Shown one piece after another: positions 6,713-30,202 of a DNA stretch of 30,202 bases. The notes under the pieces were generated by a model that was given only the letters and a program-made list of their open reading frames with translations, had not been told where the DNA came from and did not search any database. Both the position numbers and the translations under genes were made by a program. Position 1 is the stretch's first letter, and the number at the start of each line of letters is the position of its first letter. This DNA comes from Octopus sinensis. Its lineage: Eukaryota. Location: NCBI RefSeq assembly GCF_006345805.1, contig NW_021832627.1, positions 1 through 30,202 on the forward strand. The letters are read 5' to 3'.

Positions 6713-6745
<33 letters not shown>

Positions 6746-6964
6746 GTATATATATATATTAATGATATGGGGGCGTCTATGTGCATCTGTGTGTGTGAGT
6801 ACATGCACAAGTGTTCGGCTTTTAACATACACACACAGACACACACACATGCACATACACACACACGCACACACGATCACACATTATGATATATATATAT
6901 ATAAAAAATATTCATACGCATTCAGAGATCTACACACACATATAAATAGTGTATTCTCTTCTTT

Positions 6965-7460: not shown

Positions 7461-8029
7461 TATGCATGTGTGTTTATGTAGACGTCTATAAACAGGATGA
7501 AGAGGACAATCAAATGTTTAACTAATATTTCTTACGTGCGTGTAACAACGTTATGGTTGCTTGGAACCAAATGCTCACCGACAAATGACTGTCAGGAACA
7601 ACGTTATTCTATTAAGTTGCATAGTTATAGAAAGATAGAGAGAGATGGAAAAATAAATCATATATATGTGTGTGTATATATAAATGTTAAATCTTAAAAG
7701 AAAAAATAACAAAACTCGATTTATCTATTCGCATTCTGATTTCCTTTCCTGTCGAACTACCCTTTGCCTTTCATTTCTCAGAGGTGCTGAAGTCCAATTA
7801 GTCGACTGTCCAATTCCCCCACAAAACACAACCACTGGCAATCTACCTAACCCAGAAACCACTTTATAGGCGGCAATCTAGGACTTTAGGACGAAGAATT
7901 TCTACGCGGGGTCATACGTAATCATGTATGGTTATATAAAGATGCATGAGGATATATATACATAAACAAACACGCACAAATATGTGTGTGTGTATGAATG
8001 TGTGCGCATATGAGTGTGTGTATGTATTT

Positions 8030-8099
8030 TCGTTTGTATATATATATTATATATAAATATATATATGTATATATATATAAATATATATGTATATATATG

Positions 8100-8130
<31 letters not shown>

Positions 8131-8218
8131 GTATATATATGTATATATATATATATAATATATAATGTATATATATATAAATATATATATGTATATTATA
8201 TATAATAAATATATATAG

Positions 8219-8258
<40 letters not shown>

Positions 8259-8275
8259 TATATGTATATAATATG
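8030..8275. repeat. Long imperfect (TA)n microsatellite
   Basis: Direct inspection. Confidence 0.95.
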
Positions 8276-8474
8276 AATGTATATGTGAGCGTGTGTCTAC
8301 ATGTGTGTTGGAAATCATGCACATGTGTACGAGGCAAAACACTCACACACAGACACACACACACATATATATATATAGGTATATAAGTACATATTTATAT
8401 ATTCATACGCATTTATATATATACACACACGCATGCGCACACACACATATAAAGGTGTATTCTTATTCTTTAAA

Positions 8475-8920
8475 TTCCTTTACGTGTTGAAGTCATTTGC
8501 CCACGGTCATGCTGGAGCACCATATCAAAAGCCTTTAAGCCCAATAAATTGACATCAGAGCTTATTCTTTGTAAGCCAAGTACTTATTTTATTGGCCGCT
8601 TTTGCCGAACCGCAATGTTAAGGAGGGGCCTTAAAAAACGTGCTGTCAAGATATGAATGGGTAACAAACATAGTCGCAAAGACAGAAACACACATACACA
8701 AACAAATAAACTCACACACACACACACAAACACACATATGCTTCAATATATAGATACATATAGAACGCACTTCTTTCGGTTTCCGTCTACCAAATCCACT
8801 CGTAAGGCTTTGGTCAGCCAGAGGCTATAGTAGAAGACACTTTCCCAAATTGCCATGCTGTGAAACTGAACCTGGAACTATCTGCTTGTGAAGCATGTTT
8901 CTTACCACACAGCCACGCCT
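8475..8920 (-). mobile_element. CORE-type SINE (family 'B'), locally duplicated paralogue of 6965-7460
   Basis: Same head, core and tail motifs, and the same flanks (ATGCAT.TGTGTTTATGTAGA.GTCTATA...). Confidence 0.8.
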
Positions 8921-10099
8921 ATGCATATGTGTTTATGTAGAAGTCTATATATAGGATGAACAGGACAAAGAAATGTTTGAATAATAATTCTGAAGTGCAT
9001 GTAACAACGTTATGGTTGCTTGGAACCAAAATCTCACCGACAAATGATCGTCAGGAACAACTTAATTGTATAATTTGCATAGTTATAGAAAGATAGAGAG
9101 AGAGGAAAAAAAATCATATATACATGTGTGTGTAGATACAAATGTTAAATCTTAAAAGAAAAGTAACAAAAATTGATTACCTTTATAGAGCCGGCCCCAA
9201 ATATGACTTCGGTTTGAATTTTTGACAGAAATTAAATGTTTTATCCACTTATCGGAATATTCTATTGCCTCATATAAGTTTTTTGTCTCAACCTTCCAGG
9301 TGCTATCCGAAAAGCATACTGAATGAAATACCCTGTTGTAATAATTCTCTAATTATTTTTAAAACGAGAGTGGCAGTATTTTTTCTTGATGTATGTGATT
9401 GGCTGAAATTCTTTAATATCCGGAAAATAAATCCATTTTCCAGCTAGTCACCATTCCTACACGTCGAGTGTTGAAATGGTCGCTGTGCAACATAAGATGA
9501 ATTGTTCTGCGCACAAAACACCACTCGTCCCAGGATCTGAAATCACGACCTTAATCACGATTTCATGTCCTCGACTTCTATTATATTACCAAAACTTTAT
9601 TTTTCATATGTCCTGACAACACCCACAGAATATTCTTATCTACTTGTCGCTTTTCTAAAACAAACGCCATTGTTTTTACCGATTATTGGGATGGCGATAT
9701 CTGCTCAAAAATATGACCTCATCGCTCTAGTTACTAAAATGGAAACCCGGCCAATTTTCCTCGTTTCGCAGAATATATTTCAGTTATTTGTAAAGAATGC
9801 TTGTTGTTCAATGATGACAAGACTATGATCAGAGGCGTTTCGGCCATGATCATGCCGTTGATTTACTTACATCGCAATGTGTGTTGTGTTCTTTCCGTGG
9901 TTAAGACGGTAGGGTGTGGGACAATGGAATATCATTGTCTCAAATGCTTACGATAGGGCTGATAGCGCAAACGTTCAGGTAATGGACAATCATTAGTCCT
10001 GAAACCTACACCTGCAATCATTATTGTAATACATCACATGATGTGGATGTTAATTTTCATAGATCTCTCCGAAATATAAGTCCGACCTCACAATTAATT

Positions 10100-11880
10100 T
10101 TTGCTTAGAAACTCTGTCTCCCTTTTCAGCTTCCTTTCAGCAACCATAACCATGTCTCACTATTACTATTTCCTGCAACTATCTTTGCCAATCGACATTG
10201 CCATACATTCTCTTGTCAGTTAGATTATCTTCCTACTTTTTTTATTGTTTTAATTTCATTTGGCTTTTTCCTTTCCTATCTCTTACTGTAACTCTTGCAA
10301 CTCATAAATTTTATTCATTATTATATATATCAACTCTAGCTAACTCTACCCTACTTTCTGCTGATATTAAACCGCTTCCACCTTCGTTATTCTAAGTAAG
10401 TGCAATCTTGCTCTTCCTAATCGAGGCTGAAGTCCTCTATTCATATTGAATTCCTTCCTAGTTCTTCTGTCTAGATTTGCTAATTCAGATCTTTTCCAAT
10501 CAACAAATTCTGCTGAATACCGAAGTAACGACACTTCCCAAAGTTTTTACAACCTTTACTAGATTTAGAACCCTTCGCTTTCCCTTCATTAGCTTCTTCA
10601 ACCTTCCGATGTACTCCTTAGCTATTTTTGTTTTCATTTCCATTGTTAGTACACTCTCAGATTCTAATACTCCGAAGCACTTATGATTCTCTGCCTTCAG
10701 TGATATTACTCTCTTGCTATCTGGCCTTCACTCTTGACTCCCTGTCCCCTTTTTATGATTTATGATGCGCACATATCAATGCCAAATTCCATGCCTATAT
10801 CTTTTCTTAAGCGCCTTACAATTCCTATTAAGGAACCAAAAAGCTTCTAATCGTCCATCTTGAGCAAATGATTAATATTTCTTTTAACATCTCTAAACTG
10901 ATACCCTGACTTTGCCTTTCTTAGTACTAAATTGACGACAGCTAATCATAACACAAATATTAATGGAGATAACGGGTCTCCCTGGAGAATTCCTCACCTG
11001 ATATTAACTTTTCCTAAGACAGTGTCACCTGAGTAGAGATATAATTTCCAATTCTTTGCACTATAGCTGTAACTAATTAAGTCTCTTGTGTTGTCTGCAA
11101 CACTGAATATACTCGAATATTCACTTATCCGTGAGTGTTGAATCATGCCATATGATTTTTATACTGTTGAAGTTTGCATTCTTTATTTTAGAACTGCTTT
11201 CTCTGTGTGTAATTGATCGTGCGTTCCTCTAGCCTTCTTTCTGCAAACATTTCAGTTCTTCTGGTAGCAAATTCTGGTTGTCAAGTTACTTCTACATGTT
11301 TTCTGTGTGAATTCATGTTAAAAGTCTCTACATTGGGAATTTGCCTGGTTTTTGTCTATTTTGGATTTTATGTAGTTAGTTATGAATGCCTGATCGTGTG
11401 CGGTTGCTTACAAACACTGTCTCCCTTTTCATTTTCCGTTCTGAAGCCATATTTGTCTGTAAGTGTCCCTTGGCTATTCTTTCTGTACCCTTTCTGTTCC
11501 ACTGGTGCTTTGTAATTTATTTCCAGGAAATCATACACCTAATTAGATATTATTCCTGTCATCAGCTTCCACATGAGGGGCAGACAGGTGATAGGCCGGT
11601 GATTATCCACTGCATTGCTTTGTTGGGATTATTTTGGCAAAGAATTGTTTGACTTTTGGTCAGCCTCTTTGGGATTTGTACCCCGTTGTTGATCATTTTA
11701 TATATTTGCTTGGCTATTCTTCTGTGTAGTGCTGGGGAAATTTTCAGCCAATATCCTTGTACGCTATCCGGTCCTGGGTATTTCCAGTTTGGCGATTTAA
11801 TCACTCTGGCCCACATTGGTAGTCAAATATACAATGAGGCCACAGGTGTTTATACATCTGCTTTTACTCGTCCTTAATTA
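10100..11880 (-). pseudogene. Old, scrambled R4/Dong-type reverse transcriptase remnant
   Basis: Minus-strand motifs with stops and frameshifts: [118 protein letters not shown]. Confidence 0.85.
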
Positions 11881-12253
11881 CTAAACAATACTCTCCTCTC
11901 GCTCTCTTTCTCTCTCTCTCCTCTAATAACTTAATTAAATTTAACTCTCTATAATTATCTACGATGACTATGCGAGAATTTGTATGTGGGTGTGTCTGTG
12001 CGTACAAACAGACATTTATCTGTCCATTTCTAAACTCATACGTATGGATGTGTATGTATGGCCGCGTAAGTGTGTGTATCTGACTGTGTGTATATCAATA
12101 GGAATATGCCACTGCATATGTGTCTGTGTGTGTGTCTGTGTGTGTTTGCATATGTTAGTGCGTGTGTGTATGTGTATGTCTCTCTCTGTATGTATGTGTG
12201 TGTATACATGCATCCCTTTAACCCCCAAGTCAAACACCCCTTCACTATATAGA

Positions 12254-12550
12254 CTAATCTCTATATACTCTCATATATTTCTCATTCGCCCAATAATAGA
12301 CTCTTCCAAGGCCTTCCAAATCTGATTCACTTTCTATTCAAAGATGCAACTGATAACTTCCATTATCCTTTGCCAGGGACTTTCCTGGAAACTTTACTAA
12401 CTCTTCGATCACGAAAATACCAGACACATTTATCTGAGAACTCCATGGTTTCCCAAAAGACTGGTAACGAATAATATCCTCGATTAAGGATATCATGCAT
12501 TTCTGCATTTTCTTTTTTTTGTGCATATTTGTAACCACTCTGCACAGTTC
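12254..12550 (-). pseudogene. Unidentified degraded reading frame (copy A: frameshift and ~90-nt deletion relative to copy B)
   Basis: Paralogue of 21210-21593. No family recognised. Confidence 0.25.
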
Positions 12551-12735
12551 TTTTATTTGTTTCAGCCATTTCACTGCAGCCATGCTGGAGCAATGCCTTT
12601 TTCACCGAACTTATTATTTATAAGACTTGTACTTATTCTATGAGTCTCCTTTGCTGTACCACTAATTTACATGGACGTAAACTCACCAACATCGGTTGTA
12701 AAGCGATGGTGGTGGACAGACACAGACACAAAAAC
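12550..12735 (-). mobile_element. 3' half of CORE-type SINE (family 'B')
   Basis: Reverse complement of the SINE tail ...GCTCCAGCATGGCTGCAGTGAAATGGCTGAAACAAATAAAAGA. The paralogue at 21590-21950 still has the head. Confidence 0.75.
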
Positions 12736-13169
12736 TCACACACCACACACCACACACACACACACACAATACTTATATTATAAATTATAAAATGAATGTT
12801 CTTGAAAAAGGCTAAATGTTTTCTTGCTCCTAATCTGTTATAATTTATGTCCCTCCGCTCAATGATCAACCACACCTTAAACCCATGATACCCAATTTCT
12901 GCACCACATTTTTCTGTTCAAGCCGGTGTTTTAGTGGTAAACCAAACTGAGCAGTCACACTACATACGACCTTTTACATGATTTTCTTTTGTATCAACGC
13001 TAAGGTATAATATATACTTTTATGTGGCTTTGGGGAGTGGCATGAACGGATTTCTTCTATTGTATTATTTGTATTTCATTTCTCGTGTAACGAACAATTC
13101 CTTTAACGAACATGGCTTGGAAAGGATTATGTGGTATATAGAGATGGCACTGGTTTGAGAAGTTTTGAG

Positions 13170-14375: not shown

Positions 14376-14798
14376 TTTGGGACGCCTGGTGAAACGCTTA
14401 GAAGTATTTCGTCTGTCCAAAGGCGGCGAGTTGGCAGAAACGTTAGCACGTCGGGCGAAATGCTTAGCAGTATTTCGTCTAGGGTTACGTTCTGAGTTCA
14501 AATTCCGCCGAGGTCGAGATTGCCTTTCATCTTTCGGGGTCGATTAAATAAGTACCTGTTACGCACTGGGGTCGATATAATCGACTTAATCCGTTTGTCT
14601 GTCTGTCCTTGTTTGTCTTCTCTGTGTATAGCCCCTCGTGGGTAGTTAAAAAATATATATTTCATCTCTCACTACGTTCTGATTTCAAATTCCGCCGAGG
14701 TTGACTTTGTCTTTCATCCTTTCAGGGACGATAAATTAAGTACCAATTACACACTGGGTTCGATGTAATGGACTTGTCCTTGTGCTTCCAAAGACAGG
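14376..14798 (+). mobile_element. Stacked family 'A' SINEs (paralogue of 13-376, with an extra SINE head at 14421-14480)
   Basis: AGGCGGCGAGTTGGCAGAAACGTTAGCACGTCGGGCGAAATGCTTAGCAGTATTTCGTCT...GTTCAAATTCCGCCGAGGTCG. Confidence 0.8.

Positions 14799-14884
<86 letters not shown>
14799..14884. repeat. (AAT)n/(ATT)n inverted microsatellite containing a perfect 62-bp palindrome (14799-14860)
   Basis: (AAT)n switches to (ATT)n at the centre 14829/14830. The arms pair perfectly for 31 nt. Confidence 0.9.
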
Positions 14885-14885
<1 letters not shown>

Positions 14886-15134
14886 TGAGGTTTAGCTGGC
14901 AGTATCGTTAGCACTCCGGGCAAAATGCTTGGTAGTATTTCATCCATCATTAGTTTCTGAGTTCAAATTTCCCCGAGGTCTACTTCGCATTTCATCATTT
15001 CGATGTCTATAAATTAAATACCAGTTAAGTACTAGGGGCTATGTAATCGACTAACTCACCCCCCCAAAATATTTCAGGCCTTGTGCCTATAGTAGGAACG
15101 ACTGTTATTATTGTTGTAGTTGTTGTTATTATTA

Positions 15135-15175
<41 letters not shown>

Positions 15176-15199
15176 TATCATTATTATTATTATTATTAA

Positions 15200-15243
<44 letters not shown>
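14886..15243 (+). mobile_element. Family 'A' SINE with long uninterrupted (ATT)n-rich tail (empty site for the 666-2374 insertion)
   Basis: Matches 424-640. The tail at 15101-15243 joins directly to the flank that follows 2433 in copy A. Confidence 0.85.
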
Positions 15244-15669
15244 GTTTATTTAAATTCTTTCGTCTCACATACTGTGATCTCCTCAGCGACTCTCTGCTAC
15301 ACCTATTTCTTCTTATCCCGCTTATTCCGTATTAAAAATTACATTGAAAGTGTACTTAATTACTGTTTGTCAAGTGGATTGTTTATCAAATAATTTATAC
15401 TCGGAACAATTGTACATATATCCCTGGTTAAAACGGAATTTCCCACTTGGTGTGGCTCCTTGTTTTAGTAATTGTCTGCAAGTGCTATGATACTTGTGAA
15501 GCTTACTTTCAACGACGCAAATGTCTCGTTTTCACAAATATAAGTTGATGGTTGCATGAAAAATTCGGACAAGCTGAAGTAGACAGGGTGGGTAGCGCAG
15601 GTCGGTGGCGGGTGTTGAACCCCTTATTGGTGAGAGGAGGAAAAAAGACGAATGAATATGAATACACGC

Positions 15670-15742
15670 ACATACAAACACACACACACAACGCACACAC
15701 ACACACAAACACATATATATATATATATATATATACATATAT

Positions 15743-15795
<53 letters not shown>

Positions 15796-16031
15796 GTGGA
15801 GAGAGAGAGACTTTTAGTGGGGCAAACAGATCGAACCGTCTCAAGTGTAACTGTCCGAGTTGGTCGTGTCTTGTGGACTTGACTGAGGAAAGAAAGCCAC
15901 GAATGGGCCGTCTATTTTTGCCTGTCCTTCTAATCGTTGTTTCTCCTGTCCGCTTTCTATTGTCTATCTGTCCGAATCATTTATTGGCCACTATTGCGTT
16001 CCTTTACCATTTATATATATATTATATATAT

Positions 16032-16079
<48 letters not shown>

Positions 16080-16085
16080 TATACA
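15670..16085. repeat. Compound (CA)n/(TA)n/(GA)n microsatellite region
   Basis: Direct inspection. Paralogous to 2650-3650. Confidence 0.9.
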
Positions 16086-17873
16086 CAGGTGTGTATGATT
16101 GTGTATAGAAGAATATATTACTGAAAGAAATTCCAACTTTGATTTTTATGATTTATTTACAATCTTATAATAATATATGATAAGATAAGATAACATAATG
16201 AAGCGATAGAATATCAAATATCCACTCTGATTGAACAAGTACTTTCATGCATTCTTCAAGTTGTATAAAAATAGTTATTGTCTGCATCATTCGAAAGAGA
16301 AATGAATTCTGCATAAGGTGTAAAAGATAGAGGTAATTTGTATTGTCTTAGTAACAAAATATTTTGTGAGAAATAGGACTATTATCATCGGTCTTAGATT
16401 TACTTTCGCCTGTGTAGATATGTGTGTGTATAAATATTAATTTTAAATCTTAACAGGAAAGTAGCAAAAATTGATTCACCTCGATAATGCCGGCTCCAAA
16501 TATGACTTCAGTTTTAATTTTTTACACAAATTAGACAAGGTTTATCCACTTATCTGAATATTCTATTACCTCATGACAGTTTATTGTATCATTTTGCGAC
16601 TTGTATCGGATAAGAATACTGACCGAAGTACACATTTGTTATAACCCGTTATGTGTGGGGTTTTTTAACGGCAGTGTCAGTATTTTCTGTCGATGTATGG
16701 GATTCGCTGAACTTTAATATCCGGAATTTCCAGAAATTCACCATTCCTACACGACGCAAAGTAATATGAGATGAGGTGTTTTGCTTAAGAACGCAATACA
16801 AGTCCCTTTACGAGAATTGAAACCGAGATCTCGCTATCGTGAATTCAGCACCATTAGCAGCGTGGACACCAATTATATTATTGAACATGGTACATGACAT
16901 ATGTAGGCGTGACAGCATGCCAGAAATCCTTCTTATTTACTAGGCGTTTTCCTGAAGCAACACCCATTGAATTATCATGGATCCCGAAAAAGATCTGAGC
17001 GTTACTCCTAAGAGATGTCTCTTGTCAGCTAACGATATGGCGTTGTATCATGTAATGATAGAAAGTCTGACGCAGAAAATTGCGTTGTTTGATGTGGTGA
17101 TACAGTCTGAGAACGAGGCCAATTTTAGGTACATATTTTTTTGTTTTTTTGTGTGTTTTACTTAGGGTGTTGTTGTCGACGTTGTTGTTTGCCCTGACTG
17201 ATCGTAATTTTACACAAAGGCATTCCAACTATAACCAACTAATTTTTTTTATTCCAACATTAGCAACCATGTCCTCCATTGTGTAAAATAAAAGCGTGTG
17301 ATTGGAAAGAGATTTCGCAGCTATTTCCAGGTGTTTGATGGAAAACATTATAAACATATCTGCGTCACAAGCCAATGTTTCCTGATTGAGTAAAGCTATG
17401 ATCAGAGGACATCCAGTTGTCATCTTCCCATCCATTTAGTTATATAGCATTGTCTCCGGTCTCTAGGTGAGCAGGGTTTTCCCTGAATTCAATTGCTTAA
17501 GTACACATGCAACCAAAAACCCATAGGACACTTGTGTGTATACCACTAAATACATGCTTCCACCACCTCAGATCTGAATGCTTCGTCACCTTCCCATCCC
17601 CGCAGGACTTTCGAATGAAAAAATAAGTCGTTCGCTTAAAAAATATAGAGATTAAATTAAAAATATAATATTAAACAAGAATATCCAAGCAAAATAGTCG
17701 GCAATGCCTGTACACAATGCCTGTACACAAATTTACAAATTGCTTTTCAGCGTTTCTGTCGGCTATTCGCGTTCTGAGTTCCTTTCCCACCGAAGTCCCC
17801 TTTGCCTTTCATGTGTTTGTAAGTGTACCTGTGCATGTTTGTGCATGTGAATGTGTGCAATTATGTACGTTTG

Positions 17874-17950
<77 letters not shown>

Positions 17951-17959
17951 ATATATATA

Positions 17960-18225
17960 GGCTTTGGAGTGTCTGTGTGGTAAGTAGCTTGTTTACCAAT
18001 CACATGGTTCCTGGTTCAGTCCCACAGCGTTGCACTTTAGGCAAGTGTCTTTTACTATAGCCTCGGGTCGACCAAAGCCCTGTGAGTGGATTTGGTAAAC
18101 AGAAACTGAAAGAAGCCCCTCGTATATATGTATATATATATATATATATATATAAATGTGTGTGTGTGTGTGTATATATGTTTGTATGTGTGATTTTATT
18201 GGTCACTTTTGCCGATCCGCTATGT
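17960..18225 (+). mobile_element. CORE-type SINE (family 'B') with intact head
   Basis: GTGTCTGTGTGGTAAGTAGCTTGTTTACCAATCACATGGTTCCTGGTTCAGTCCCACAGCGTTGCACTTTAGGCAAGTGTCTTTTACTATAGCCTCGGGTCGACC. The TTAGGCAAGTGTCTT segment resembles the CORE-SINE domain. Confidence 0.8.
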
Positions 18226-19319
18226 TATTTTTGCTTGGAACCAAATGCTCACCGAAAAATGATCGTCAGGAACAACGTTATTTTATTAAGTCTCATATTT
18301 ATAGAAAGATAGAGAGAGAGGGAAAAAATAAATCATATATATGTGTGTGTATATATAAATGTAAAATCTTAAAAGAAAAGTAAGAAAATTATTTACCTTT
18401 ATAACGCCGGCTCCAAATATTACTTCAGTTTGGATTTTTAACAGAAATTAAATCAATTTTATCCACTTATCTAAATATTCTATTTTTGTCCAACGTTCCA
18501 GGTGCTATCCGATAAGCATACTGAATGAAATACCCTGTTTGTAATTCTCCTTTCTTTTTTAAACGAGAGTGGCAGTATTTTCCCTTGATGTATGTGATTG
18601 GCTGAAATTCTTTAATATCCGGAAAATAAAACTATTTTCCAGCTACTCACCATTCCTACACGTCAAGTGTTGAAATGGTCGCTGTGTAACATGAGACGAA
18701 GTGTCTTGCGCGCCATACATCTCTCGGTCCTGTATTTGAAATCACGAGCTTGTTATCGTGTGTAGCACCCTTAACTACGGTTTCATGTGTCCTCGACTTC
18801 TATTATATTACCAAAATTTTATTTTTCATATGTCCTGGCAACACCCATTCTTATCTACTTGACGCTTTTCTAAAACAAACGCCATTGTTTTTATCGATTA
18901 TTGGGATGGCCATATCTGCTCAAAGATACGACCTCATCTCTCGAGTTACTAAAATGCAAACCCGACGAATATTCCTCGTTTCCCAGAATATATTTCAGTT
19001 GCTTGTAAAGAATGCTTGTTGTTCACTGATGACAAGAATATGATCATAGGCGTTTCGGTTATGATTATCCCGTCGATTTCCTTATATCGCAAAGTGTGTT
19101 GTGTTCTTTCCGTGGTTAAGACGGTAGGGTGTGAGACAATGGAATATCATTGTCTCACATGCTTACGACAGGGCTGATAGCGCAAATGATCCAGTAATAG
19201 GCATTCATTAGTCCTGAAACCTACATCTACAATAATTATTGTATGACATCAGAGGACGTGGATGTTAATATTCATAGATATCTCCGAAATATAAGTCCGA
19301 CCTCACTATCAAGATGTTG

Positions 19320-20855
19320 CTTAGAAACTCTGTCTCCCTTTTCAGATTCCTTTCAGCAACCATAACCATGTCTCAATATTACTATTTCCTGCAACTATCT
19401 TTGCCAATCGACCATGCAAAACATTCTCATGTCAGTTTCTCCCTTATTTTTCTGGTTTTAATTTCATATGGCTTTTTCCTTTCCTATCTGCTACTATAAC
19501 TCTTGCAAATCATAGATTTTCTTCACTATTATATATATCAACTCTGGCTATCTCTACGCTACCTTCTGGTTATATTAAACCTCTTCCACTTTCGTTATTC
19601 TAAGTAAGTGCAATGTTGCTCTTCCTAATCGAGGCTGAAGTCCTCCATTCATATTGAATTCCTTCCTTGTTCTTCTGTCTAGATTTGGTAATTCAGATTT
19701 TTTCAAATCAACAAATTCTGCTGAAAACCGAAGTAACCATACTTCCCAAAGTTTTTACAACCTTTACTAGATTTAGAACACTTAGCTTTCCCTTCATTAG
19801 CTTCTTCACCCTTCCGATGTACTCCTTATCTATTTTTGTTTTTAGTTCTATTGTTAGTACACTGTCAGATTCTAATACTCCGAAGCACTTATGATTCTCT
19901 TCCTTCAGTGATTTTACTCTCTTGCTATCTGGCCTTCACTGCTGACTACCTGTCCCTTTTTTATGACTGATGTTGCGCACATATCTATGCCAAATTCCAT
20001 GCCTATATCTTTGCTGCAGAGTCTTCTAATTCGTATTAAGGAACCAAAAGGCTTCTAATCGTCCATCTTGAGCAAATGATTAATATTCCCTTTATCATCT
20101 CTAAACTGATACCCTGCTTCTGCCTTTCTTAGTACTAAACTGACGACAGTTAAGCATAACACATATATTAATGGGGATAACGTGTCTCCCTGGAGAATTC
20201 TTCGCCCGATATTAACATTTCCTAAGGCAGTGTCACCTGTTTCCGATTCTTTGCACTATTGCTGTAAAATAATTAAGTCTCTGGTATTGTCTGCAATACT
20301 GAATATACTCAAACATTTACTTATCCGTGAGTGTTGCATCATGTCTATTTTGGCTTTTATCTAGTTAGTTATGAATGCCTGACCGTGTGCAGTTGCTTAC
20401 AAACTGTGTCTCCCGTTTCATTTTCCTTTCTGAAACCATATTAGTCTGTAACTGTCTCTTTCTGTACCCTTTCTGTTCCACTGGCTCTTTGTAATTTATT
20501 TCCTGGAAATTATACACCTAATTAGATTTTATTCCTTTCAACAACTTCCACATGAGGGGCAGACAGGTGATAGGCCGGTGATTATCCACTGCATTGCTTT
20601 GTTGGGATTCTTTTGGCAAAGAATTGTTTTACTTGTGGTCAGCCTCTTTTGGATTTGTACTCCGTTGTTGATAATTTATATATTTGCTTGGCTATTCTTC
20701 TGTGTAGTGATGGGGAAATTTTCAGCCAATATCCTTGTACCCTATCCAGTCCTGGGTATTTCCAGTTTGGCGATTTAATCACTCTGGCCCACATTGGTAG
20801 ACAAATATACAATGAGGTGACTGGCGTTGTTGCATCTGCTTTTTCTCATCCTTAA
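19320..20855 (-). pseudogene. Paralogue of the old R4/Dong RT remnant, with an extra ~200-nt internal deletion
   Basis: Collinear with 10100-11880. The segment equivalent to about 11150-11355 is absent at about 20345. Confidence 0.85.
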
Positions 20856-21209
20856 TTACTAAACAATCCTCTCCTCTCTCTCCTCTACTGACCTAATTTA
20901 ATTTAACTCTCTATACTTATATACGATGACTATGCGAGAAATTGTATGTGGGTGTGTCTGTGCGTGCAAACATACATTTATCTGTCCATCTCTAAACTCA
21001 TACGTATGCATGTGTATGTATGGCCGCGTAATTGTGTGTATCTGACTGCGTGTATATCAATGGGAATATGCCACTGCATGTATGTGTGTGTGCGTCTGTG
21101 TGTGCATATGTTAGTGCGTGTGTATATATGTATGTCTCTATCCGTATGCATGTATGTGTATACATGCATCCCCTTAACCCCCAAGTCAAACACCCCTTCA
21201 CTATATAGA

Positions 21210-21593
21210 CTAATCTCTATATACTCTCATATATTTCTCATTCGCCCAATAATAGACTCTTCCAAGGCCTTCCAAATCTGATTCACCTTCTATTCAAAGA
21301 TGCAACTGTTAACTTCCATTATCCTTTGCCAGGGACTTTCCTGGAAACTTTACTAACTCTTCGATCACGAAAATACCAACACATTTATCTGAGAACTCCA
21401 TGGTTTCCCAAAAGACTGGTAACGAATAATATCCTCGATAAAGGATATTATGCATTTCTGCATTTTCTTCTTCTTTCTCCAATAACGGAATGATTTGCTC
21501 AGATGGAATTCTTTACTCAATAACATGCTTAGCTATTCTAGAAACAGCTATAAGAGACTTTGTGCATATTTGTAACCACTCTGCACAGTTCTT
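21210..21593 (-). pseudogene. Unidentified degraded reading frame of 128 codons with three internal stops
   Basis: KNCAEWLQICTKSLIAVSRIAKHVIE*RIPSEQIIPLLEKEEENAEMHNILYRGYYSLPVFWETMEFSDKCVGIFVIEELVKFPGKSLAKDNGS*QLHL*IEGESDLEGLGRVYYWANEKYMRVYRD*. The second stop is TAT (Tyr) in copy A. No family recognised. Confidence 0.3.
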
Positions 21594-21950
21594 TTATTTG
21601 TTTCAGCCATTTTACTGCGGCCATGCTGTAGCACCACCTTTTTAATCGAACTTATTTGTAAGCCTTGTACTTATTCTATGAGTCTTCTTTGCTGAACCAC
21701 TAAATTACGGGGACGTAAACTCACCAACATCGGTTGTCAAGCGATGGTCGGGGACAAACATAGACACTCAAACTCACACACACATCCACATGATGGGCTT
21801 CTTTCAGTTTCCGTCTTCCAGATCCACTAACAAGGCTTTGGTCGGCCCGAGGTTATAGTAGAACGCATTTACCAAGACGCCACGCAATGGGACTGAACCC
21901 CGAACCATGTGGTTAGTAAGCACTCTACTTACTAAACAGCTACTCATGCA
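21590..21950 (-). mobile_element. CORE-type SINE (family 'B'), near full length
   Basis: Reverse strand has head ...CACATGGTTCGGGTTCAGTCCCATTGCGTGGCGTCTTGGTAAATG...TATAACCTCGGGCCGACCAAAGCCTTG and tail GGTGCTACAGCATGGCCGCAG. Confidence 0.8.
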
Positions 21951-22247
21951 CTCACACTTATATTATAAATTATAAAATGAATGTTCTTGAATAACGCTAA
22001 ATATTTTGCTTGATCATTATCTGTTATAATTTATGTCCCTCCGCTCAATGATAAACCACTTCATATCACCTTTCATACGCAATTTCTCCACCACATTTTT
22101 CTGTTTCAGCCGGTGTTTTAGTTGTAAACCAAACTGAGCAGTCACACTACATACGGCCTTTTACATGATTTTCTTTTGTATCAACGCTAAGGTATAATGT
22201 ATACTTTTATGTGGCTTTGGGGAGGGCATGGAACACATTTCTTCTAT

Positions 22248-22465
22248 TTGTACAGTTAAAAAGTTAAGTTGTACAGTTAAAAAGTATAGAGCTTAAATTA
22301 AAAAGATAATATTAAACAAGAATATCCAAGCAAAATAGTCGGCAATGCCTGTACACAATGCCTGTACACAAATTTACAAATTGCTTTGCAGCGCTTCTGT
22401 CGGCTATTCGCGTGCTAAAATCCAATTAGTTGACTGTCCCCTTCTCCCACAGAAACACAACCCTC
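22248..22465. repeat. Third, partial copy of the duplicated unit (matches 5213-5460 and 17625-17810)
   Basis: TTGTACAGTTAAAAAGTATAGAGCTTAAATT...AATGCCTGTACACAATGCCTGTACAC...GCGCTTCTGTCGG is shared with 5213-5350, including the 13-nt tandem duplication AATGCCTGTACAC. Confidence 0.9.
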
Positions 22466-23122: not shown

Positions 23123-26100
23123 GTGTTGGCGAATGTAGTGTTGGCGAATCTCAGGAAGCATGGACGTTTTGAAGGATGCAGTGCTCCGACAAGTAACAAC
23201 TGATGCCGGCAGTTTGTTCCATGCTTGTATGTGTATGGAGGGGAGAAAATCAAGTGTAGTGTTGGCGAATCTCAGAAAGCATGGAAGTTTTGAAGGATGC
23301 AGTGCTCCGACAACTAACAGCTGATGCCGGCAGTTTGTTCCATGCTTGTATGTGTATGGAGGGGAGAAAATCAAGTGTAGTGTTGGCGAATCTCAGGAAG
23401 CATGGACGTTTTGAAGGATGCAGTGCTCCGACAACTAACAACTGATGCCGGCAGTTTGTTCCATGCATCAGCGTGTGTATGGAGGGGAGAAGATCAGGTG
23501 TAGTGTTGACGAATCTCAGGAAGCATGGAAGTTTTGAAGGATGCAGTGCTCCGACAACTAACAACTGATGCCGGCAGTTTGTTCCGTGCTTGCGTGTGTA
23601 TGGAGGGGAGAAAATCAGGTGTAGTGTTGGCGAATCTCAGGAAGCATGGAAGTTTTGAAGGATGCAGTGCTCCGACAAGTAACAACTGATGCCGGCAGTT
23701 TGTTCCGTGCTTGCGTGTGTATGGAGGGGAGAAAATCAGGTGTAGTGTTGCCGAATCTCAGGAAGCATGGAAGTTTTGAAGGATGCAGTGCTCAGACAAG
23801 TAACAACTGATGCCGGCAGTTTGTTCCATGCTTGCGTGTGTATGGAGGGGAGAAAATCAGGTGTAGTGTTGCCGAATCTCAGGAAGCATGGAAGTTTTGA
23901 AGGATGCAGTGCTCAGACAATTAACAACTGATGCCGGCAGTTTGTTCCATGCTTGCGTGTGTATGGAGGGGAGAAAATCAGGTGTAGTGTTGGCGAATCT
24001 CAGGAAGCATGGAAGTTTTAAAGGATGCAGTGCTCAGACAACCAACAACTGATGCCGGCAGTTTGTTCCATGCTTGCGTGTGTATGGAGGGGAGAAAATC
24101 AGGTGTAGTGTTGCCGAATCTCAGGAAGCATGGAAGTTTTGAAGGATGCAGTGCTCAGACAATTAACAACTGATGCCGGCAGTTTGTTCCATGCTTGCGT
24201 GTGTATGGAGGGGAGAAAATCAAGTGTAGTGTTGGCGAATCTCAGGAAGCATGGAAGTTTTGAAGGATGCAGTGCTCCGACAACTAACAACTGATGCCGG
24301 CAAGTTGCTCCATTCTTGAGTGTGTATGGAGGGGAGAAGATCAGGTGTAGTGTTGGCGAATCTCAGGAAGCATGGAAGTTTTGAAGGATGCAGTGCTCCG
24401 ACAACTAACAACTGATGCCGGCAGGTTGTTCCATGCTTGTGTGTGTATGGAGGGGAGAAAATCAGGTGTAGTGTTGGCGAATCTCAGGAAGCATGGAAGT
24501 TTTGAAGGATGCATTGCTCCGACAAGTAACAACTGATGCCGGCAGTTTGTTCCATGCTTGCGTGTGTATGGAGGGGAGAAAATCAGGTGTAGTGTTGCCG
24601 AATCTCAGGAAGCATGGAAGTTTTGAAGGATGCAGTGCTCAGACAAGTAACAACTGATGCCGGCAGTTTGTTCCATGCTTGCGTGTGTATGGAGGGGAGA
24701 AAATCAGGTGTAGTGTTGCCGAATCTCTGGAAGCATGGAAGTTTTGAAGGATGCAGTGCTCAGACCATTAACAACTGATGCCGGCAGTTTGTTCCATGCT
24801 TGCGTGTGTATGGAGGGGAGAAAATCAGGTGTAGTGTTGGCGAATCTCAGGAAGCATGGAAGTTTTAAAGGATGCAGTGCTCAGACAACCAACAACTGAT
24901 GCCGGCAGTTTGTTCCATGCTTGCGTGTGTATGGAGGGGAGAAAATCAGGTGTAGTGTTGCCGAATCTCAGGAAGCATGGAAATTTTGAAGGATGCAGTG
25001 CTCAGACAACCAACAACTGATGCCGGCAGTTTGTTCCATGCTTGCGTGTGTATGGAGGGGAGAAAATCAGGTGTAGTGTTGCCGAATCTCAGGAGCATGG
25101 AAAGTTTTTGAAGATGCAGTGCTCAGACAACTAACAACTGATGCCGGCAGTTTGTTCCATGCTTGCGTGTGTATGGAGGGGAGAAAATCAGGTGTAGTTT
25201 TGGCGAATCTCAGGAAGCATGGACGTTTGGAAGGATGCAGTGCTCCGACAACTAACAACTGATGCCGGCAGTTTGTTCCATGCTTGCGTGTGTATGGAGG
25301 GGAGAAAATCAGGTGTAGTGTTGCCGAATCTCAGGAAGAATGGAAGTTTTGAAGGATGCAGTGCTCAGACAACTAACAACTGATGCCGGCAGTTTGTTCC
25401 ATGCTTGCGTGTGTATGGAGGGGAGAAAATCAGGTGTAGTGTTGCCGAATTTCAGGAAGCATGGAGGTTTTGAAGGATGCAGTGCTCAGACAACTAACAA
25501 CTGATGCCGGCAGTTTGTTCCATGCTTGCGTGTGTATGGAGGGGAGAAAATCAGGTGTAGTGTTGGCGAATCTCAGGAAGCATGGAAGTTTTGAAGGATG
25601 CAGTGCTCCGACAACTAACAACTGATGCCGGCAGTTTGTTCCATGCATTAGCGTGTGTATGGAGGGGAGAAGATCAGGTGTAGTGTTGACGAATCTCAGG
25701 AAGCATGGAAGTTTTGAAGGATGCAGTGCTCCGACAACTAACAACTGATGCCGGCAGTTTGTTCCGTGCTTGCGTGTGTATGGAGGGGAGAAAATCAGGT
25801 GTAGTGTTGGCGAATCTCAGGAAGCATGGAAGTTTTGAAGGATGCATTGCTCCGACAAGTAACAACTGATGCCGGCAGGTTTGTTCCGTGCTTGCGTGTG
25901 TATGGAGGGGAGAAAATCAGGTGTAGTGTTGCCGAATCTCAGGAAGCATGGAAGTTTTGAAGGATGCAGTGCTCAGACAAGTAACAACTGATGCCGGCAG
26001 TTTGTTCCATGCTTGCGTGTGTATGGAGGGGAGAAAATCAGGTGTAGTGTTGCCGAATCTCTGGAAGCATGGAAGTTTTGAAGGATGCAGTGCTCAGACC

Positions 26101-29100
26101 ATTAACAACTGATGCCGGCAGTTTGTTCCATGCTTGCGTGTGTATGGAGGGGAGAAATCAGGTGTAGTGTTGGCGAATCTCAGGAAGCATGGAAGTTTTA
26201 AAGGATGCAGTGCTCAGACAACCAACAACTGATGCCGGCAGTTTGTTCCATGCTTGCGTGTGTATGGAGGGGAGAAAATCAGGTGTAGTGTTGCCGAATC
26301 TCAGGAAGCATGGAAGTTTTGAAGGATGCAGTGCTCAGACAACCAACAACTGATGCCGGCAGTTTGTTCCATGCTTGCGTGTGTATGGAGGGGAGAAAAT
26401 CAGGTGTAGTGTTGCCGAATCTCAGGAAGCATGGAAGTTTTGAAGATGCAGTGCTCAGACAACTAACAACTGATGCCGGCAGTTTGTTCCATGCTTGCGT
26501 GTGTATGGAGGGGAGAAAATCAGGTGTAGTTTTGGCGAATCTCAGGAAGCATGGACGTTTGGAAGGATGCAGTGCTCCGACAACTAACAACTGATGCCGG
26601 CAGTTTGTTCCATGCTTGCGTGTGTATGGAGGGGAGAAAATCAGGTGTAGTGTTGCCGAATCTCAGGAAGAATGGAAGTTTTGAAGGATGCAGTGCTCAG
26701 ACAACTAACAACTGATGCCGGCAGTTTGTTCCATGCTTGCGTGTGTATGGAGGGGAGAAAATCAGGTGTAGTGTTGCCGAATCTCAGGAAGCATGGAGGT
26801 TTTGAAGGATGCAGTGCTCAGACAACTAACAACTGATGCCGGCAGTTTGTTCCATGCTTGCGTGTGTATGGAGGGGAGAAAATCAGGTGTAGTGTTGCCG
26901 AATCTCAGGAAGCATGGACGTTTTGAAGGATGCAGTGCTCCGACAACTAACAACTGATGCCGGCAGTTTGTTCCATGCTTGCGTGTGTATGGAGGGGAGG
27001 ATATCAGGTGTAGTGTTGGCGAATCTCAGGAAGCATGGACGTTTTGAAGGATGCAGTGCTCCGACAACTAACAACTGATGCCGGCAGTTTGTTCCATGCT
27101 TGCGTGTGTATGGAGGGGAGAAAATCAGGTGTAGTGTTGGCGAATCTCAGGAAGCATGGACGTTTTGAAGGATGCAGTGCTCCGACAACTAACAACTGAT
27201 GCCGGCAGTTTGTTCCATGCTTGCGTGTGTATGGAGGGGAGAAAATCAGGTGTAGTGTTGGCGAATCTCAGGAAGCATGGACGTTTTGAAGGATGCAGTG
27301 CTCCGACAACTAACAACTGATGCCGGCAGTTTGTTCCATGCTTGTGTGTGTATGGAGTGGAGAAAATCAGGTGTAGTGTTGGCGAATCTCAGGAAGCATA
27401 GAAGTTTTGAAGGATGCAGTGCTCCGACAACTAACAACTGATGCCGGCAGTTTGTTCCATGCTTGTGTGTGTATGGAGGGGAAAAAATCAGGTTTAGTGT
27501 TGGCGAATCTCAGAAAGCATGGAGGTTTTGAAAGATGCAGTGCTCAGACAATTAACAACTGATGCTGGCAGGTTGCTCCATGCTTGTGTGTGTATGGAGG
27601 GGAGAAAATCAGGTGTAGTGTTGGCGAATCTCAGGAAGAATGTAAGTTTTGAAGGATGCAGTGCTCAGACGATTAACAACTGATGCCGGCAGTTTGTTCC
27701 ATGCTTGTGTGTGTATGGAGGGGAGAAAAATCAGGTGTAGTGTTGGCGAATCTCAGGAAGCATGGAAGTTTTGAAGGATGCAGTGCTCCGACAACTAACA
27801 ACTGATGCCGGCAGTTTGTACCATGCTTGCGTGTGTATGGAGGGGAGGAAATCAGGTGTAGTGTTGGCGAATCTCAGAAAGCATGGAGGTTTTGAAGGAT
27901 GCAGTGCTCAGACAATTAACAACTGATGCCGGCAGTTTGTTCCATGCTTGCGTGTGTATGGAGGGGAGAAAATCAGGTGTAGTGTTGGCGAATCTCAGGA
28001 AGCATGGAAGTTTTGAAGGATGCAGTGCTCCGACAACTAACAACTGATGCCGGCAGGTTGTTCCATGCTTGAGTGTGTATGGAGGGGAGAAAATCAGGTG
28101 TAGTGTTGGCGAATCTCAGGAAGAATGGAAGTTTTGAAGGATGCAGTGCTCAGACGATTAACAACTGATGCCGGCAGTTTGTTCCATGCTTGCGTGTGTA
28201 TGGAGGGGAGGAAATCAGGTGTAGTGTTGGCGAATCTCAGAAAGCATGGAAGTTTTGAAGGATGCAGTGCTCCGACAACTAACAACTGATGCCGGCAGTT
28301 TGTTCCTTGCTTGTGTGTGTATGGAGGGGAGGAAATCAGGTGTAGTATTAGCGAATCTCAGGAAGCATGGAAGTTTTGAAGGATGCAGTGCTCCGACAAC
28401 TAACAACTGATGCCAGCAGTTTGTTCCATGCTTGTGTGTGTATGGAGGGGAGGAAATCAGGTATAGTGTTGGCGAATCTCAGGAAGCATGGAAGTTTTGA
28501 AGGATGCAGTGCGCAGACAACTAACAACTGATGCCGGCAGTTTGTTCCATGCTTGCGTGTGTATGGAGGGGAGAAAATCAGGTGTAGTGTTGGCGAATCT
28601 CAGAAAGCATGGACATTTTGAAGGATGCAGTGCTCAGACAATTAACAACTGATGCCGGCAGTTTGTTCCATGCTTGTGTGTGTATGGAGGGGAGAAAATC
28701 AGGTGTAGTGTTGGCGAATCTCAGGAAGCATGGAAGTTTTGAAGGATGCAGTGCTCCGACAACTAACAACTGATGCCGGCAGTTTGTTCCATGCTTGTGT
28801 GTGTATGGAGTGGAGAAAATCAGGTGTAGTGTTGGCGAATCTCAGGAAGCATGGAAGTTTTGAAGGATGCAGTGCTCCGACAACTATCAACTGATGCCGG
28901 CAGTTTGTTCCATGCTTGTGTGTGTTTGGAGGGGAACAAATCAGGTTTAGTGTTGGCGAATCTCAGAAAGCATGGAGGTTTTGAAAGATGCAGTGCTCAG
29001 ACAATTAACAACTGATGCTGGCAGGTTGCTCCATGCTTGTGTGTGTATGGAGGGGAGAAAATCAGGTGTAGAGTTGGCGAATCTCAGGAAGAATGGAAGT

Positions 29101-30202
29101 TTTGAAGGATGCAGTGCTCAGACAATTAACAACTGATGCCGGCAGTTTGTTCCATGCTTGCGTGTGTATGGAGGGGAGGAAATCAGGTGTAGTGTTGGCG
29201 AATCTCAGAAAGCATGGAGGTTTTGAAAGATGCAGTGCTCAGACAATTAACAACTGATGCTGGCAGGTTGCTCCATGCTTGTGTGTGTATGGAGGGGAGA
29301 AAATCAGGTGTAGAGTTGGCGAATCTCAGGAAGCATGAAAGTTTTGAAGGATGCAGTGCTCAGACGATTAACAACTGATGCCGGCAGTTTGTTCCATGCT
29401 TGTGTGTGTATGGAGGGGAGAAAAATCAGGTGTAGTGTTGGCGAATCTCAGGAAGCATGGAAGTTTTGAAGGATGCAGTGTTCCGACAATTAACAACTGA
29501 TGCCGGCAGTTTGTTCCATGCTTGTGTGTGTATGGAGGGGAGAAATATCAGGTGTAGTGTTGGCAAATCTCAGGAAGCATGGAAGTTTTGAAGGATGCAG
29601 TGCTCCGACAACTAACAACTGATGCCGGCAGGTTGTTCCATGCTTGAGTGTGTATGGAGGGGAGAAAATCAGGTGTAGTGTTGGCGAATCTCAGGAAGAA
29701 TGGAAGTTTTGAAGGATGCAGTGCTCAGACAATTAACAACTGATGCCGGCAGTTTGTTCCATGCTTGTGTGTGTATGGAGGGGAGAAAATCAGGTGTAGT
29801 GTTGGCGAATCTCAGGAAGCATGGAAGTTTTGAAGGATGCAGTGCTCGACAACTAACAACTGATGCCGGCAGTTTGTTCCATGCTTGTGTGTATGGAGGG
29901 GAGAAGATCAGGTGTTGGCGAATCTCAGAAGCATGGAAGTTTTGAAGGATGCAGTGCTCCGACAACTAACAACTGATGCCGGCAGTTTGTTCCATGCTTG
30001 CGGGTGTATGGAGGGGAGGAAATCAGGTGTAGTGTTGGCGAATCTCAGGAAGCATGGAGTTTTGAAGGATGCAGTGCTCAGACAACTAACAACTGATGCC
30101 GGCAGGTGTTCCATGCTTGTGTGTGTATGGAGGGGAGAAAATCAGGTGTAGTGTTGGCGAATCTCAGGAAGCACGGAAGTTTTGAAGGATGCAGTGTTCG
30201 AC
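23123..30202. repeat. Tandem satellite array, 121-bp monomer, about 58 copies visible (runs off the window), derived from a LINE ORF2 C-terminus/3' UTR on the minus strand
   Basis: Consensus GTGTAGTGTTGGCGAATCTCAGGAAGCATGGAAGTTTTGAAGGATGCAGTGCTCCGACAACTAACAACTGATGCCGGCAGTTTGTTCCATGCTTGCGTGTGTATGGAGGGGAGAAAATCAG (121 nt, 59 G+C). The minus strand translates to AWNKLPASVVSCRSTASFKTSMLPEIRQHYT*. Confidence 0.97.

What the first reader, a model, noticed from the sequence alone, without database searches (positions are those of the whole stretch)
23494..27003. Higher-order repeat: 7-mer + 11-mer + 11-mer blocks in the left half of the array
Seen: diagnostic variants recur at fixed spacing. The GA(A/G)(G/T)ATCAGG block starts are at 23494, 24341, 25674 and 27004 (gaps 847 = 7x121, 1333 and 1330 = about 11x121). 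TTTTAAAGG is at 24020, 24867 and 26200 (gaps 847 and 1333). TCTCTGGAAG (24728/26062), GTAGTTTTGG (25198/26531), GCATTGCTCC, GGACGTTTGG and GAAGAATGG all recur at about 1333. The GCCGAAT variant is confined to about 23750-26900. Known: multi-monomer higher-order repeats typify actively homogenising centromeric satellites such as primate alpha satellite. Inference: recent block amplification by unequal crossover.
Basis: partly seen in the sequence, partly recalled or inferred. Interest (0 to 1): 0.7.

Follow-up and report, generated by a model that had tools for sequence, protein, structure and literature searches.

The report
LINE-tail satellite with local 11-monomer duplication
The 7+11+11 monomer block pattern is real, but it is a small, recent multi-monomer duplication inside a 121-bp tandem array that arose from the tail end of a jumping gene (a LINE retrotransposon) in an octopus genome; nothing here shows it is a centromere.

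Summary
Observation confirmed. A 121-bp satellite runs from 23134 to the window end (58 full monomers). Monomers m03-m09 (23376-24224), m10-m20 (24225-25555) and m21-m31 (25556-26887) form 7+11+11 blocks. In register, m12-20 and m23-31 are 99.3% identical, against 95.6-96.5% out of register. No shuffle of monomer order (0/5000, 0/3000) reproduced the colinearity. The fourth 'block start' (27004) is a different variant, and the pattern stops at m31.

This is 2.6 copies of an 11-monomer unit whose monomers differ by only about 4%, so it is an incipient local HOR, not an alpha-satellite-like homogenised array. History needs at least three events: an older split of block A, a younger B/C duplication, and a ~250-bp conversion-like patch in B.

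New result: the monomer is the last 31 codons, the stop and ~23 nt of 3'UTR of an APE+RT LINE ORF2 (minus strand). Octopus vulgaris carries it as single TE copies bracketed by an AAGCATG direct repeat 121 bp apart, and as a TE 3' end carrying 6.9 tandem units. TE-derived satellites are a known kind. Centromere function and assembly correctness could not be tested.

The parts
23134..30202 (-). 121-bp satellite array, 58 full monomers plus a partial one, cut by the window end. The parent retrotransposon reads on the minus strand.
   Evidence: TRF; monomer starts; alignment; tblastn of P0121 residues 89/90-121 onto the minus strand at 97% identity
23122..23133 (-). Partial monomer (GTGTTGGCGAAT) at the left edge of the array. 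It abuts a (TA)n(TG)n microsatellite. The array ends inside the former coding part, not at a TE terminus.
   Evidence: Sequence read directly
23376..24224 (-). Block A: monomers m03-m09, equal to unit positions 1-7 (partial copy of the 11-monomer unit)
   Evidence: Lag-18 differences 2,0,2,0,3,0,3; 98.8% identical to m21-m27
24225..25555 (-). Block B: monomers m10-m20, a full 11-monomer unit
   Evidence: Lag-11 differences; m12-20 vs m23-31 99.3%; class string .D.BECF.GHI
25556..26887 (-). Block C: monomers m21-m31, a full 11-monomer unit
   Evidence: Class string .A.BECF.GHI
24304..24555 (-). Patch of about 250 bp in block B (m10 column 80 to m12 column 89) holding 12 contiguous B-private differences. 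m11 is within 1 difference of right-half monomers m41 and m54. Conversion-like tract.
   Evidence: Three-way site comparison; classes
26888..27008 (-). m32: transitional monomer, the last with the GCCGAAT variant. Its tail is GAGGATATCAGG. It is not a homologue of unit position 1.
27009..30202 (-). Right part of the array: more diverse monomers, mostly of the ancestral type (G at column 11, often C at column 54). Only short scattered duplications: m35-37~m47-49, m37-38~m51-52, m41-42~m54-55.
   Evidence: polarity from TE copies

Best explanation
The region is part of a tandem array of a 121-bp unit. The unit was copied out of the 3' end of a LINE (APE endonuclease + reverse transcriptase) retrotransposon of an octopus. 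On the minus strand each monomer is the last 31 codons of ORF2 (AWNKLPASVVSC[R/L]STASFKTSMLPEIRQHYT), the stop codon and about 23 nt of 3'UTR.

In the parent element this stretch is bracketed by an imperfect direct repeat, GC(TG)AAGCATG, 121-123 bp apart. That repeat is the likely substrate for the founding tandem duplication (inferred).

Once tandem, the array grew and turned over by out-of-register exchange between its ~95% identical monomers. In the left part, a derived monomer subfamily (C at column 11, A at column 54) diversified into an ordered string of 11 distinguishable monomers. That string was then duplicated as a block.

Shown: the blocks are 1-7 | 1-11 | 1-11. For unit positions 3-7, B and C are each other's closest relatives and A is older. 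A ~250-bp patch at the start of B carries variants typical of monomers elsewhere in the array.

Inferred: at least three events.
1. A 7-monomer-offset duplication, or an 11-offset duplication followed by loss of positions 8-11.
2. A later 11-monomer-offset duplication, by unequal sister-chromatid or homologue exchange, or by replication slippage/BIR.
3. A short gene-conversion or double-exchange patch.

The array most likely has no sequence-specific function. It is a young, locally amplifying TE-derived satellite.
For: Array and monomers.

Block order and significance:
- 0/5000 shuffles
- 99.3% in register vs 95.6-96.5% out of register
- class string
- 0/3000 shuffles

Mosaic history: for unit positions 3-7 there are 6 A-private sites against 2 B-private and 2 C-private. 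Twelve contiguous B-private sites run from m10 to m12.

TE origin:
- The satellite ORF hits the O. vulgaris protein P0121.
- The consensus is 96% identical over 128 bp to a single non-tandem copy in L001, with CATGCTT at both ends.
- L002 has the TE ORF 3' part continuous with a 6.9-copy 121-bp array that starts exactly at AAGCATGG.
- P0130 is named a jockey-like RT by NCBI.
- The profile of the family hits the extreme C-terminus of 820-1025-aa proteins, and all 8 that were tested carry Exo_endo_phos plus RVT_1.

Polarity: TE copies and L002 units all have G11 and C54, so the C11/A54 monomers of the block domain are derived.

Precedents for LINE-3'-end satellites: PMC9659126.
Against: - Only 2.6 unit copies are visible and the array is cut by the window end, so the block pattern could be a one-off.
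- No reads were available. Five of the eight B-C differences are 1-bp homopolymer indels, three of them clustered in m17. That looks like long-read consensus noise and leaves room for mis-assembly of copy number.
- The mechanism of duplication is inferred from the pattern alone.
- The founding role of the AAGCATG repeat is inferred from two O. vulgaris copies.
- The species of the window was not identified directly.
Confidence: 0.8

Rival explanations
1. Assembly artefact: the second 11-monomer block, or the 7-monomer block, was created by the assembler mis-joining reads in a near-identical tandem array. The true locus would have fewer blocks.
For: The copies are 98.8-99.3% identical, which is within the range where long-read assemblers expand or collapse repeats. 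Several differences are homopolymer indels typical of consensus error, such as m17 with three within 20 bp.
Against: The blocks are not identical. There are true substitutions (3 for B-C, 8 for A-C), and the mosaic is structured, with A older than B/C and a contiguous 12-site patch in B. That is what evolution of separate copies produces, not the duplication of one read pile.
Confidence: 0.1
2. Functional centromeric HOR: the 121-bp repeat is a centromere satellite of the octopus. The 11-mer would be the young, actively homogenising core, as in primate alpha satellite.
For: The derived, block-duplicated monomers are flanked on both sides by more ancestral-type monomers, which loosely resembles layered centromere arrays. 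Cephalopod centromere DNA is not described in the searched literature, so this cannot be excluded.
Against: - Only 2.6 unit copies, and 4% divergence within the unit.
- No significant dyad or fold signal.
- The array edge lies beside ordinary microsatellite- and TE-rich DNA with a diverged segmental duplication.
- The same unit occurs as dispersed TE tails and as a 7-copy mini-array in O. vulgaris, as expected for a TE by-product.
- Array size beyond 7 kb is unknown.
Confidence: 0.07
3. Amplification without crossover: the blocks arose by rolling-circle replication and reinsertion of an extrachromosomal circle. Alternatively, template jumping of the LINE reverse transcriptase during insertion produced tandem 3' ends.
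For: In L002 the array is attached directly to the TE 3' end, which RT template switching at the AAGCATG repeat could produce in one step. EccDNA and microhomology routes are documented for euchromatic satellites in Drosophila (10.1101/846238, listed; abstract only read).
Against: A rolling circle of 11 monomers gives cyclically continuous copies. Here position 7 is followed by position 1, and the three blocks have different ages, so several separate events are needed anyway. Neither the L002 array nor the window's array ends with the element's normal 3' terminus (TATCTGAC...). That argues against a simple one-step reverse-transcription product. RT jumping could explain the founding of the array but not the 11-monomer order.
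Confidence: 0.1

Closest known systems
Primate alpha-satellite higher-order repeats
   Same: Head-to-tail monomers in which an ordered multi-monomer unit is repeated. Unit copies are much more alike (99.3%) than neighbouring monomers (about 96%). Derived young monomers are flanked by older types.
   Different: Here there are only 2 full copies plus one partial copy. Monomers within the unit differ by about 4% rather than 20-40%. The monomer is 121 bp. There is no CENP-B-box-type feature, no evidence of centromere location, and the sequence is unrelated.
Chicken HinfI repeat derived from CR1 (3'UTR plus partial ORF2), the cetacean common satellite derived from the L1 3' end, and Drosophila 18HT derived from HeT-A/TART (as summarised in PMC9659126)
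   Same: A satellite monomer made from the 3' end (partial ORF2 and/or 3'UTR) of a non-LTR retrotransposon.
   Different: Different host (an octopus), a different LINE family, and a different unit length. Here the intermediate stages are visible side by side: a single copy with a flanking direct repeat, a 7-copy array on the TE, and an array of at least 58 copies with block structure.
TE-to-satellite transitions through tandem TE dimers or microhomology (McGurk & Barbash 2018, PMC5932611; Sproul et al. 2020, 10.1101/846238)
   Same: A TE-derived sequence becomes tandem and then expands by recombination. A short direct repeat lies at the unit boundaries.
   Different: The unit here is an internal 121-bp piece of the element rather than a whole element or a double insertion. 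The mechanism was not tested here.

Membership tests
Higher-order repeat (HOR) satellite organisation | Tandem head-to-tail monomers of one family | tested here: met
   58 monomers of 116-123 bp, 95% matches
Higher-order repeat (HOR) satellite organisation | Copies of an ordered multi-monomer unit are clearly more similar to each other than the monomers within the unit are | tested here: met
   99.3% in register vs 95.6-96.5% out of register; median 1 difference between homologous positions vs a mean of 5.1 within the unit; 0/5000 and 0/3000 shuffles
Higher-order repeat (HOR) satellite organisation | The unit is reiterated many times, giving a homogenised array | tested here: not met
   Only 7+11+11 monomers (2.6 units). 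The order stops at m31/m32 and is absent from m33-m58. Copies elsewhere in the genome could not be searched.
Higher-order repeat (HOR) satellite organisation | Monomers within the unit are well differentiated types (20-40% in alpha satellite) | tested here: not met
   2-10 differences per 121 bp, mean 4.3%
LINE-derived (TE-derived) satellite DNA | The monomer is homologous to a defined segment of a transposable element | tested here: met
   96% over 128 bp to the O. vulgaris TE copy. The minus strand translates to the ORF C-terminus at 97% identity. The family profile matches the C-terminus of APE+RVT_1 proteins.
LINE-derived (TE-derived) satellite DNA | The same segment occurs as dispersed single copies within element copies | tested here: met
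   L001 10269-10396 and 9884-10003; L003 874-972; L004 567-657 and 5227-5317. All are single, non-tandem copies.
LINE-derived (TE-derived) satellite DNA | Intermediate forms: an element copy carrying a short tandem array of the segment | tested here: met
   L002 8665-9495: 6.9 units continuous with the TE ORF
Centromeric satellite | Bound by the centromeric histone (CenH3/CENP-A) and located at the primary constriction | not testable with these tools
   No chromatin or cytogenetic data. No relevant octopus literature found.
Centromeric satellite | Very long arrays (hundreds of kb or more) | tested here: inconclusive
   At least 7.07 kb. The array runs off the window end.
Centromeric satellite | Dyad symmetry or non-B DNA propensity (reported for satellites that lack CENP-B boxes; from my own knowledge) | tested here: not met
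   A 10-bp inverted repeat, AAGCATGGAA/TTCCATGCTT, exists. However, the monomer fold energy is ordinary: -12.8 kcal/mol, z = -0.21, and 85/200 shuffles fold as well.

The most novel reading that the evidence does not exclude
The LINE-tail 121-bp repeat is a centromeric, or otherwise chromosomally important, satellite of octopus chromosomes. The 11-monomer unit would be its young expanding core. That would give the first sequence-level handle on cephalopod centromeres, together with a visible TE-to-centromere-satellite birth series.
Probability: 0.07. Interest if true: 0.65.

Novelty: new member of a known kind. Interest (0 to 1): 0.33.

Why it matters
As a repeat pattern it is ordinary: satellites commonly show local multi-monomer duplications. 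The value lies in the context found here. Three stages of satellite birth can be seen for one sequence:
1. A single copy inside a LINE 3' end, with a flanking direct repeat.
2. A 7-unit array still attached to the element.
3. An array of at least 58 units that has begun to form higher-order blocks.

That makes it a clean example for studying how retrotransposon tails turn into satellites. I found no description of cephalopod satellite or centromere DNA in the library searched. For genome annotators, it also explains why short 'hypothetical protein' or 'Tick transposon' gene models are called on such arrays.

Tried and rejected
- Ungapped lag identity was confounded by 1-2-bp indels and was replaced by monomer decomposition.
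- Rfam and the tRNA scan: nothing in the window.
- Exact-pattern scans of the metagenome and prokaryote genome collections with a conserved 25-mer: no match.
- Full-text search for six monomer substrings: no paper.
- Searches for '121 bp satellite' and for octopus or cephalopod satellites and centromeres: nothing relevant.
- The flanking LINE RT fragment (window 1574-2347, minus strand) gave only hits of 59% identity or less among the top hits (up to 67% over partial alignments lower in the list), from many animals. It did not identify the species.
- Pfam has no model for the ORF2 C-terminal tail, so membership was shown through full-length homologues instead.
- Extending the block order leftwards (m01-m02) or rightwards (m32-m33): rejected, 7-9 and 7/3 differences.
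- An 18-monomer duplication model: rejected, because lag-18 similarity stops after m09/m27.
- A nested G-C-C trimer inside the 11-mer: seen at one column only, with no lag-3 similarity. Left as a hint.
- Higher-order structure in the right half: not significant at strict thresholds.
Full report
**1. What is in the sequence**

The window looks eukaryotic. GC content is 30-42% in the first 23 kb, and microsatellites are dense: (TA)n, (TG)n, (ATT)n, (AG)n. From 23134 to the window end there is one tandem array of a 121-bp unit, with 58.4 copies at 95% matches and a strong G-over-C skew. A wrap-around alignment to the unit gives 58 full monomers (m01-m58). Most are exactly 121 bp, and a few are 116-123 bp. 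The unit does not occur elsewhere in the window.

**2. Checking the observation**

- GAAGATCAGG-type tails: 23489, 24336, 25669 (gaps 847 and 1333).
- TTTTAAAGG: 24016, 24863, 26196.
- Five other variants recur at 1332-1334 bp.
- GCCGAAT is confined to 23750-26897 within the array.

The fourth 'block start' at about 27004 is not the same variant. m32 ends GAGGATATCAGG and differs from m21 at 7 positions.

The aligned monomers and their difference matrix show three blocks:
- A = m03-m09 (23376-24224)
- B = m10-m20 (24225-25555)
- C = m21-m31 (25556-26887)

Differences between homologous monomers:
- B vs C (m12-m20 vs m23-m31): 2,0,1,0,1,9,0,0,1
- A vs C: 2,0,2,0,3,0,3

The '9' for m17/m28 is an alignment effect. 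Both monomers share a G deletion, and m17 has three further 1-bp homopolymer changes.

With monomers grouped at <=1 difference, the array reads '.A.BBCB | .D.BECF.GHI | .A.BECF.GHI', followed by no repeated order. Gapped block alignments give 99.3% for m12-20 vs m23-31 and 98.8% for A vs C. Eight out-of-register controls give 95.6-96.5%. Shuffling the monomer order never reproduced the colinearity (0 of 5000; 0 of 3000). The right half has a few short duplicated runs (m35-37~m47-49, m37-38~m51-52, m41-42~m54-55). Its colinearity is weak: 26 of 3000 shuffles at the loosest cut-off and nothing at stricter ones. The observation therefore stands and is far beyond chance.

**3. What the satellite is**

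The minus strand of the array carries ~100-aa open frames. One of them was used as a query against the protein collection and hit a single protein, P0121 of Octopus vulgaris ('Hypothetical predicted protein' / 'Tick transposon'). Its C-terminus, AWNKLPASVVSCRSTASFKTSMLPEIRQHYT, is the monomer's translation.

At the DNA level the consensus is 96% identical over 128 bp to one non-tandem stretch at the 3' end of that gene (L001 10269-10396). A second copy lies 393 bp upstream. The match is 7 bp longer than a monomer because the octopus copy has CATGCTT (AAGCATG in TE orientation) at both ends, 121 bp apart.

A second O. vulgaris locus, L002, shows the same ORF tail running straight into 6.9 tandem 121-123-bp units. 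These begin exactly at AAGCATGG and are 93-97% identical to the window's consensus.

The protein family is the tail of a LINE ORF2:
- P0130 overlaps P0121 and is named a jockey-like reverse transcriptase by NCBI.
- A profile of the family matched 15,979 representatives, including many 820-1025-aa proteins at their extreme C-terminus.
- All eight of those that I scanned have Exo_endo_phos(_2) plus RVT_1.

So each monomer equals the last 31 codons, the stop and about 23 nt of 3'UTR of an APE-type non-LTR retrotransposon. No other part of the element is in the window.

More distant single copies (about 85%) occur on two contigs of another sample. The window therefore most likely comes from an octopus, either O. 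vulgaris or a close relative. This is inferred from 93-97% identity to the O. vulgaris copies. The species was not identified directly.

**4. Polarity and history**

All TE copies and all L002 units have G at column 11 and C at column 54. The C11 (GCCGAAT) and A54 states that characterise the block domain are therefore derived. More ancestral-type monomers lie on both sides (m01-m05 and m33 onward).

The two 123-bp monomers at unit position 1 (m03, m21) keep a TE-type junction, GCTGA(T)GCATGG, also seen in L002 units. The parent element has the imperfect direct repeat GC(TG)AAGCATG at both ends of the unit. That repeat can yield both 121- and 123-bp units, depending on where the founding exchange fell (the founding step is inferred).

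Site-by-site comparison of A, B and C shows:
- For unit positions 3-7 there are 6 A-private sites against 2 B-private and 2 C-private. B and C are therefore the youngest pair, and A split off earlier.
- Twelve B-private differences form one contiguous tract of about 250 bp, from m10 column 80 to m12 column 89 (about 24304-24555).
- Within that tract, m11 is within one difference of the right-half monomers m41 and m54. This looks like a conversion or double-exchange patch.

At least three events are therefore needed.

**5. Mechanism**

The most likely sequence of events, with the status of each step marked:
- A microhomology-flanked piece of a LINE tail became tandem (inferred). The stages are visible in L001, then L002, then the window.
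- The array expanded by out-of-register exchange among ~95% identical monomers (inferred, standard for satellites).
- A derived subfamily diversified into 11 distinguishable monomers (shown).
- These were duplicated as blocks with offsets of 7 (or 11 followed by a 4-monomer loss) and 11 monomers (pattern shown, process inferred).
- A short patch was overwritten (pattern shown).

B and C differ by 3 substitutions in 1089 bp, and A and C by 8 in 849 bp. Monomers within the unit differ by about 4%. The block duplications are therefore much younger than the monomer diversification.

**6. Rivals**

Assembly artefact cannot be excluded without reads. The homopolymer indels suggest noisy long-read consensus. 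However, the substitutions and the structured mosaic argue for real, separately evolving copies.

Centromeric function is unsupported:
- there are only 2.6 units;
- the monomer fold is ordinary (z = -0.21);
- the flank is ordinary TE- and microsatellite-rich DNA;
- the same unit occurs as dispersed TE tails.

It is also not excluded, because cephalopod centromere DNA is not described in the literature I could search.

Rolling-circle or reverse-transcriptase template jumping might found an array. Neither explains a 7-to-1 junction and blocks of different ages.

**7. Comparison with what is known**

The organisation works like a nascent HOR but fails two defining features of the alpha-satellite type: many reiterations, and strongly differentiated monomers. 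It meets all three tested features of a TE-derived satellite.

LINE-3'-end satellites are documented: chicken HinfI/CR1, the cetacean common satellite/L1, and Drosophila 18HT/HeT-A (PMC9659126). TE-to-satellite routes are discussed in PMC5932611 and 10.1101/846238. This is therefore a new member of a known kind.

**8. Verdict**

The added finding is the LINE-tail origin, with intermediates in Octopus vulgaris. Interest is modest.

Noticed in passing
window 75-13064 and 14494-22252: The flank consists of two diverged (85-94% identical) copies of a large segment, in colinear pieces: 75-653~14494-15115, 2375-2602~15191-15416, 3575-5397~16008-17812, 9009-11147~18224-20343, 11353-13064~20342-22252. 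Copy 1 carries extra DNA at 653-2375 and 5397-9009. A 165-bp piece (5203-5367) recurs at 17618 and again at 22259, just before the satellite.
   Followed up: partly
window 928-2347, minus strand: A frameshifted fragment of a different LINE (ORFs of 257, 146 and 119 aa; zf-RVT hit). The highest-ranked database relatives are only 54-61% identical and come from diverse animals. It lies in the stretch that is missing from the second copy of the flank duplication, so it probably inserted after that duplication.
   Followed up: partly
window 82-178, 266-362, 502-598, 14688-14784, 14966-15062: SINE-like units of about 97 bp (…GAGGTCGA…TTTCATCCTTTC…GATAAATTAAGTACCAGTT…), often next to (ATT)n runs. No tRNA or Rfam match.
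   Followed up: no
window 25072-25192 (m17) vs 26405-26524 (m28): Both monomers share a G deletion (GAAGGATGC to GAAGATGC). m17 also has three 1-bp homopolymer length changes within about 20 bp. This looks like long-read consensus error and is a warning about base-level accuracy of the array.
   Followed up: partly
window 25556-26887 (unit C), column 11 of each monomer: Within the 11-monomer unit, the G/C variant at column 11 reads G A | G C C | G C C | G C C. This hints at an older 3-monomer periodicity nested inside the 11-mer. It is seen at this one site only, and there is no lag-3 similarity otherwise.
   Followed up: partly
window 23376-23498 (m03) and 25556-25678 (m21); L002 8665-9495: The two 123-bp monomers at unit position 1 retain the parent element's junction GCTGA(A/T)GCATGG, as do units of the O. 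vulgaris mini-array. The GAAGATCAGG tail variant is likewise shared with L002 units. Part of the variant pool therefore predates this array.
   Followed up: partly
L002 9493-9783: The O. vulgaris mini-array is followed immediately by the C-terminal coding end of a different LINE of the same superfamily (…WNKLPDEMV…), in the same orientation. The array itself ends inside the 3'UTR part of a unit, without the element's normal 3' terminus.
   Followed up: no
L001 9577-10396: Two 5'-truncated copies of the LINE tail lie head to tail, 393 bp apart. Each was annotated as a small protein (P0127-like and P0121). The first has an 8-bp deletion. The locus also holds C2H2 zinc-finger gene arrays with 84-bp periodicity.
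   Followed up: no
window 27493-29430: A distinctive monomer subtype with about 9 private variants (T2, A22, G32, A41, T60, T74, G81, C85, T98) occurs three times (m37, m49, m51). Twice it is followed by the same partner type (m38, m52). These are short scattered duplications at lags of 2, 12 and 14 monomers.
   Followed up: partly
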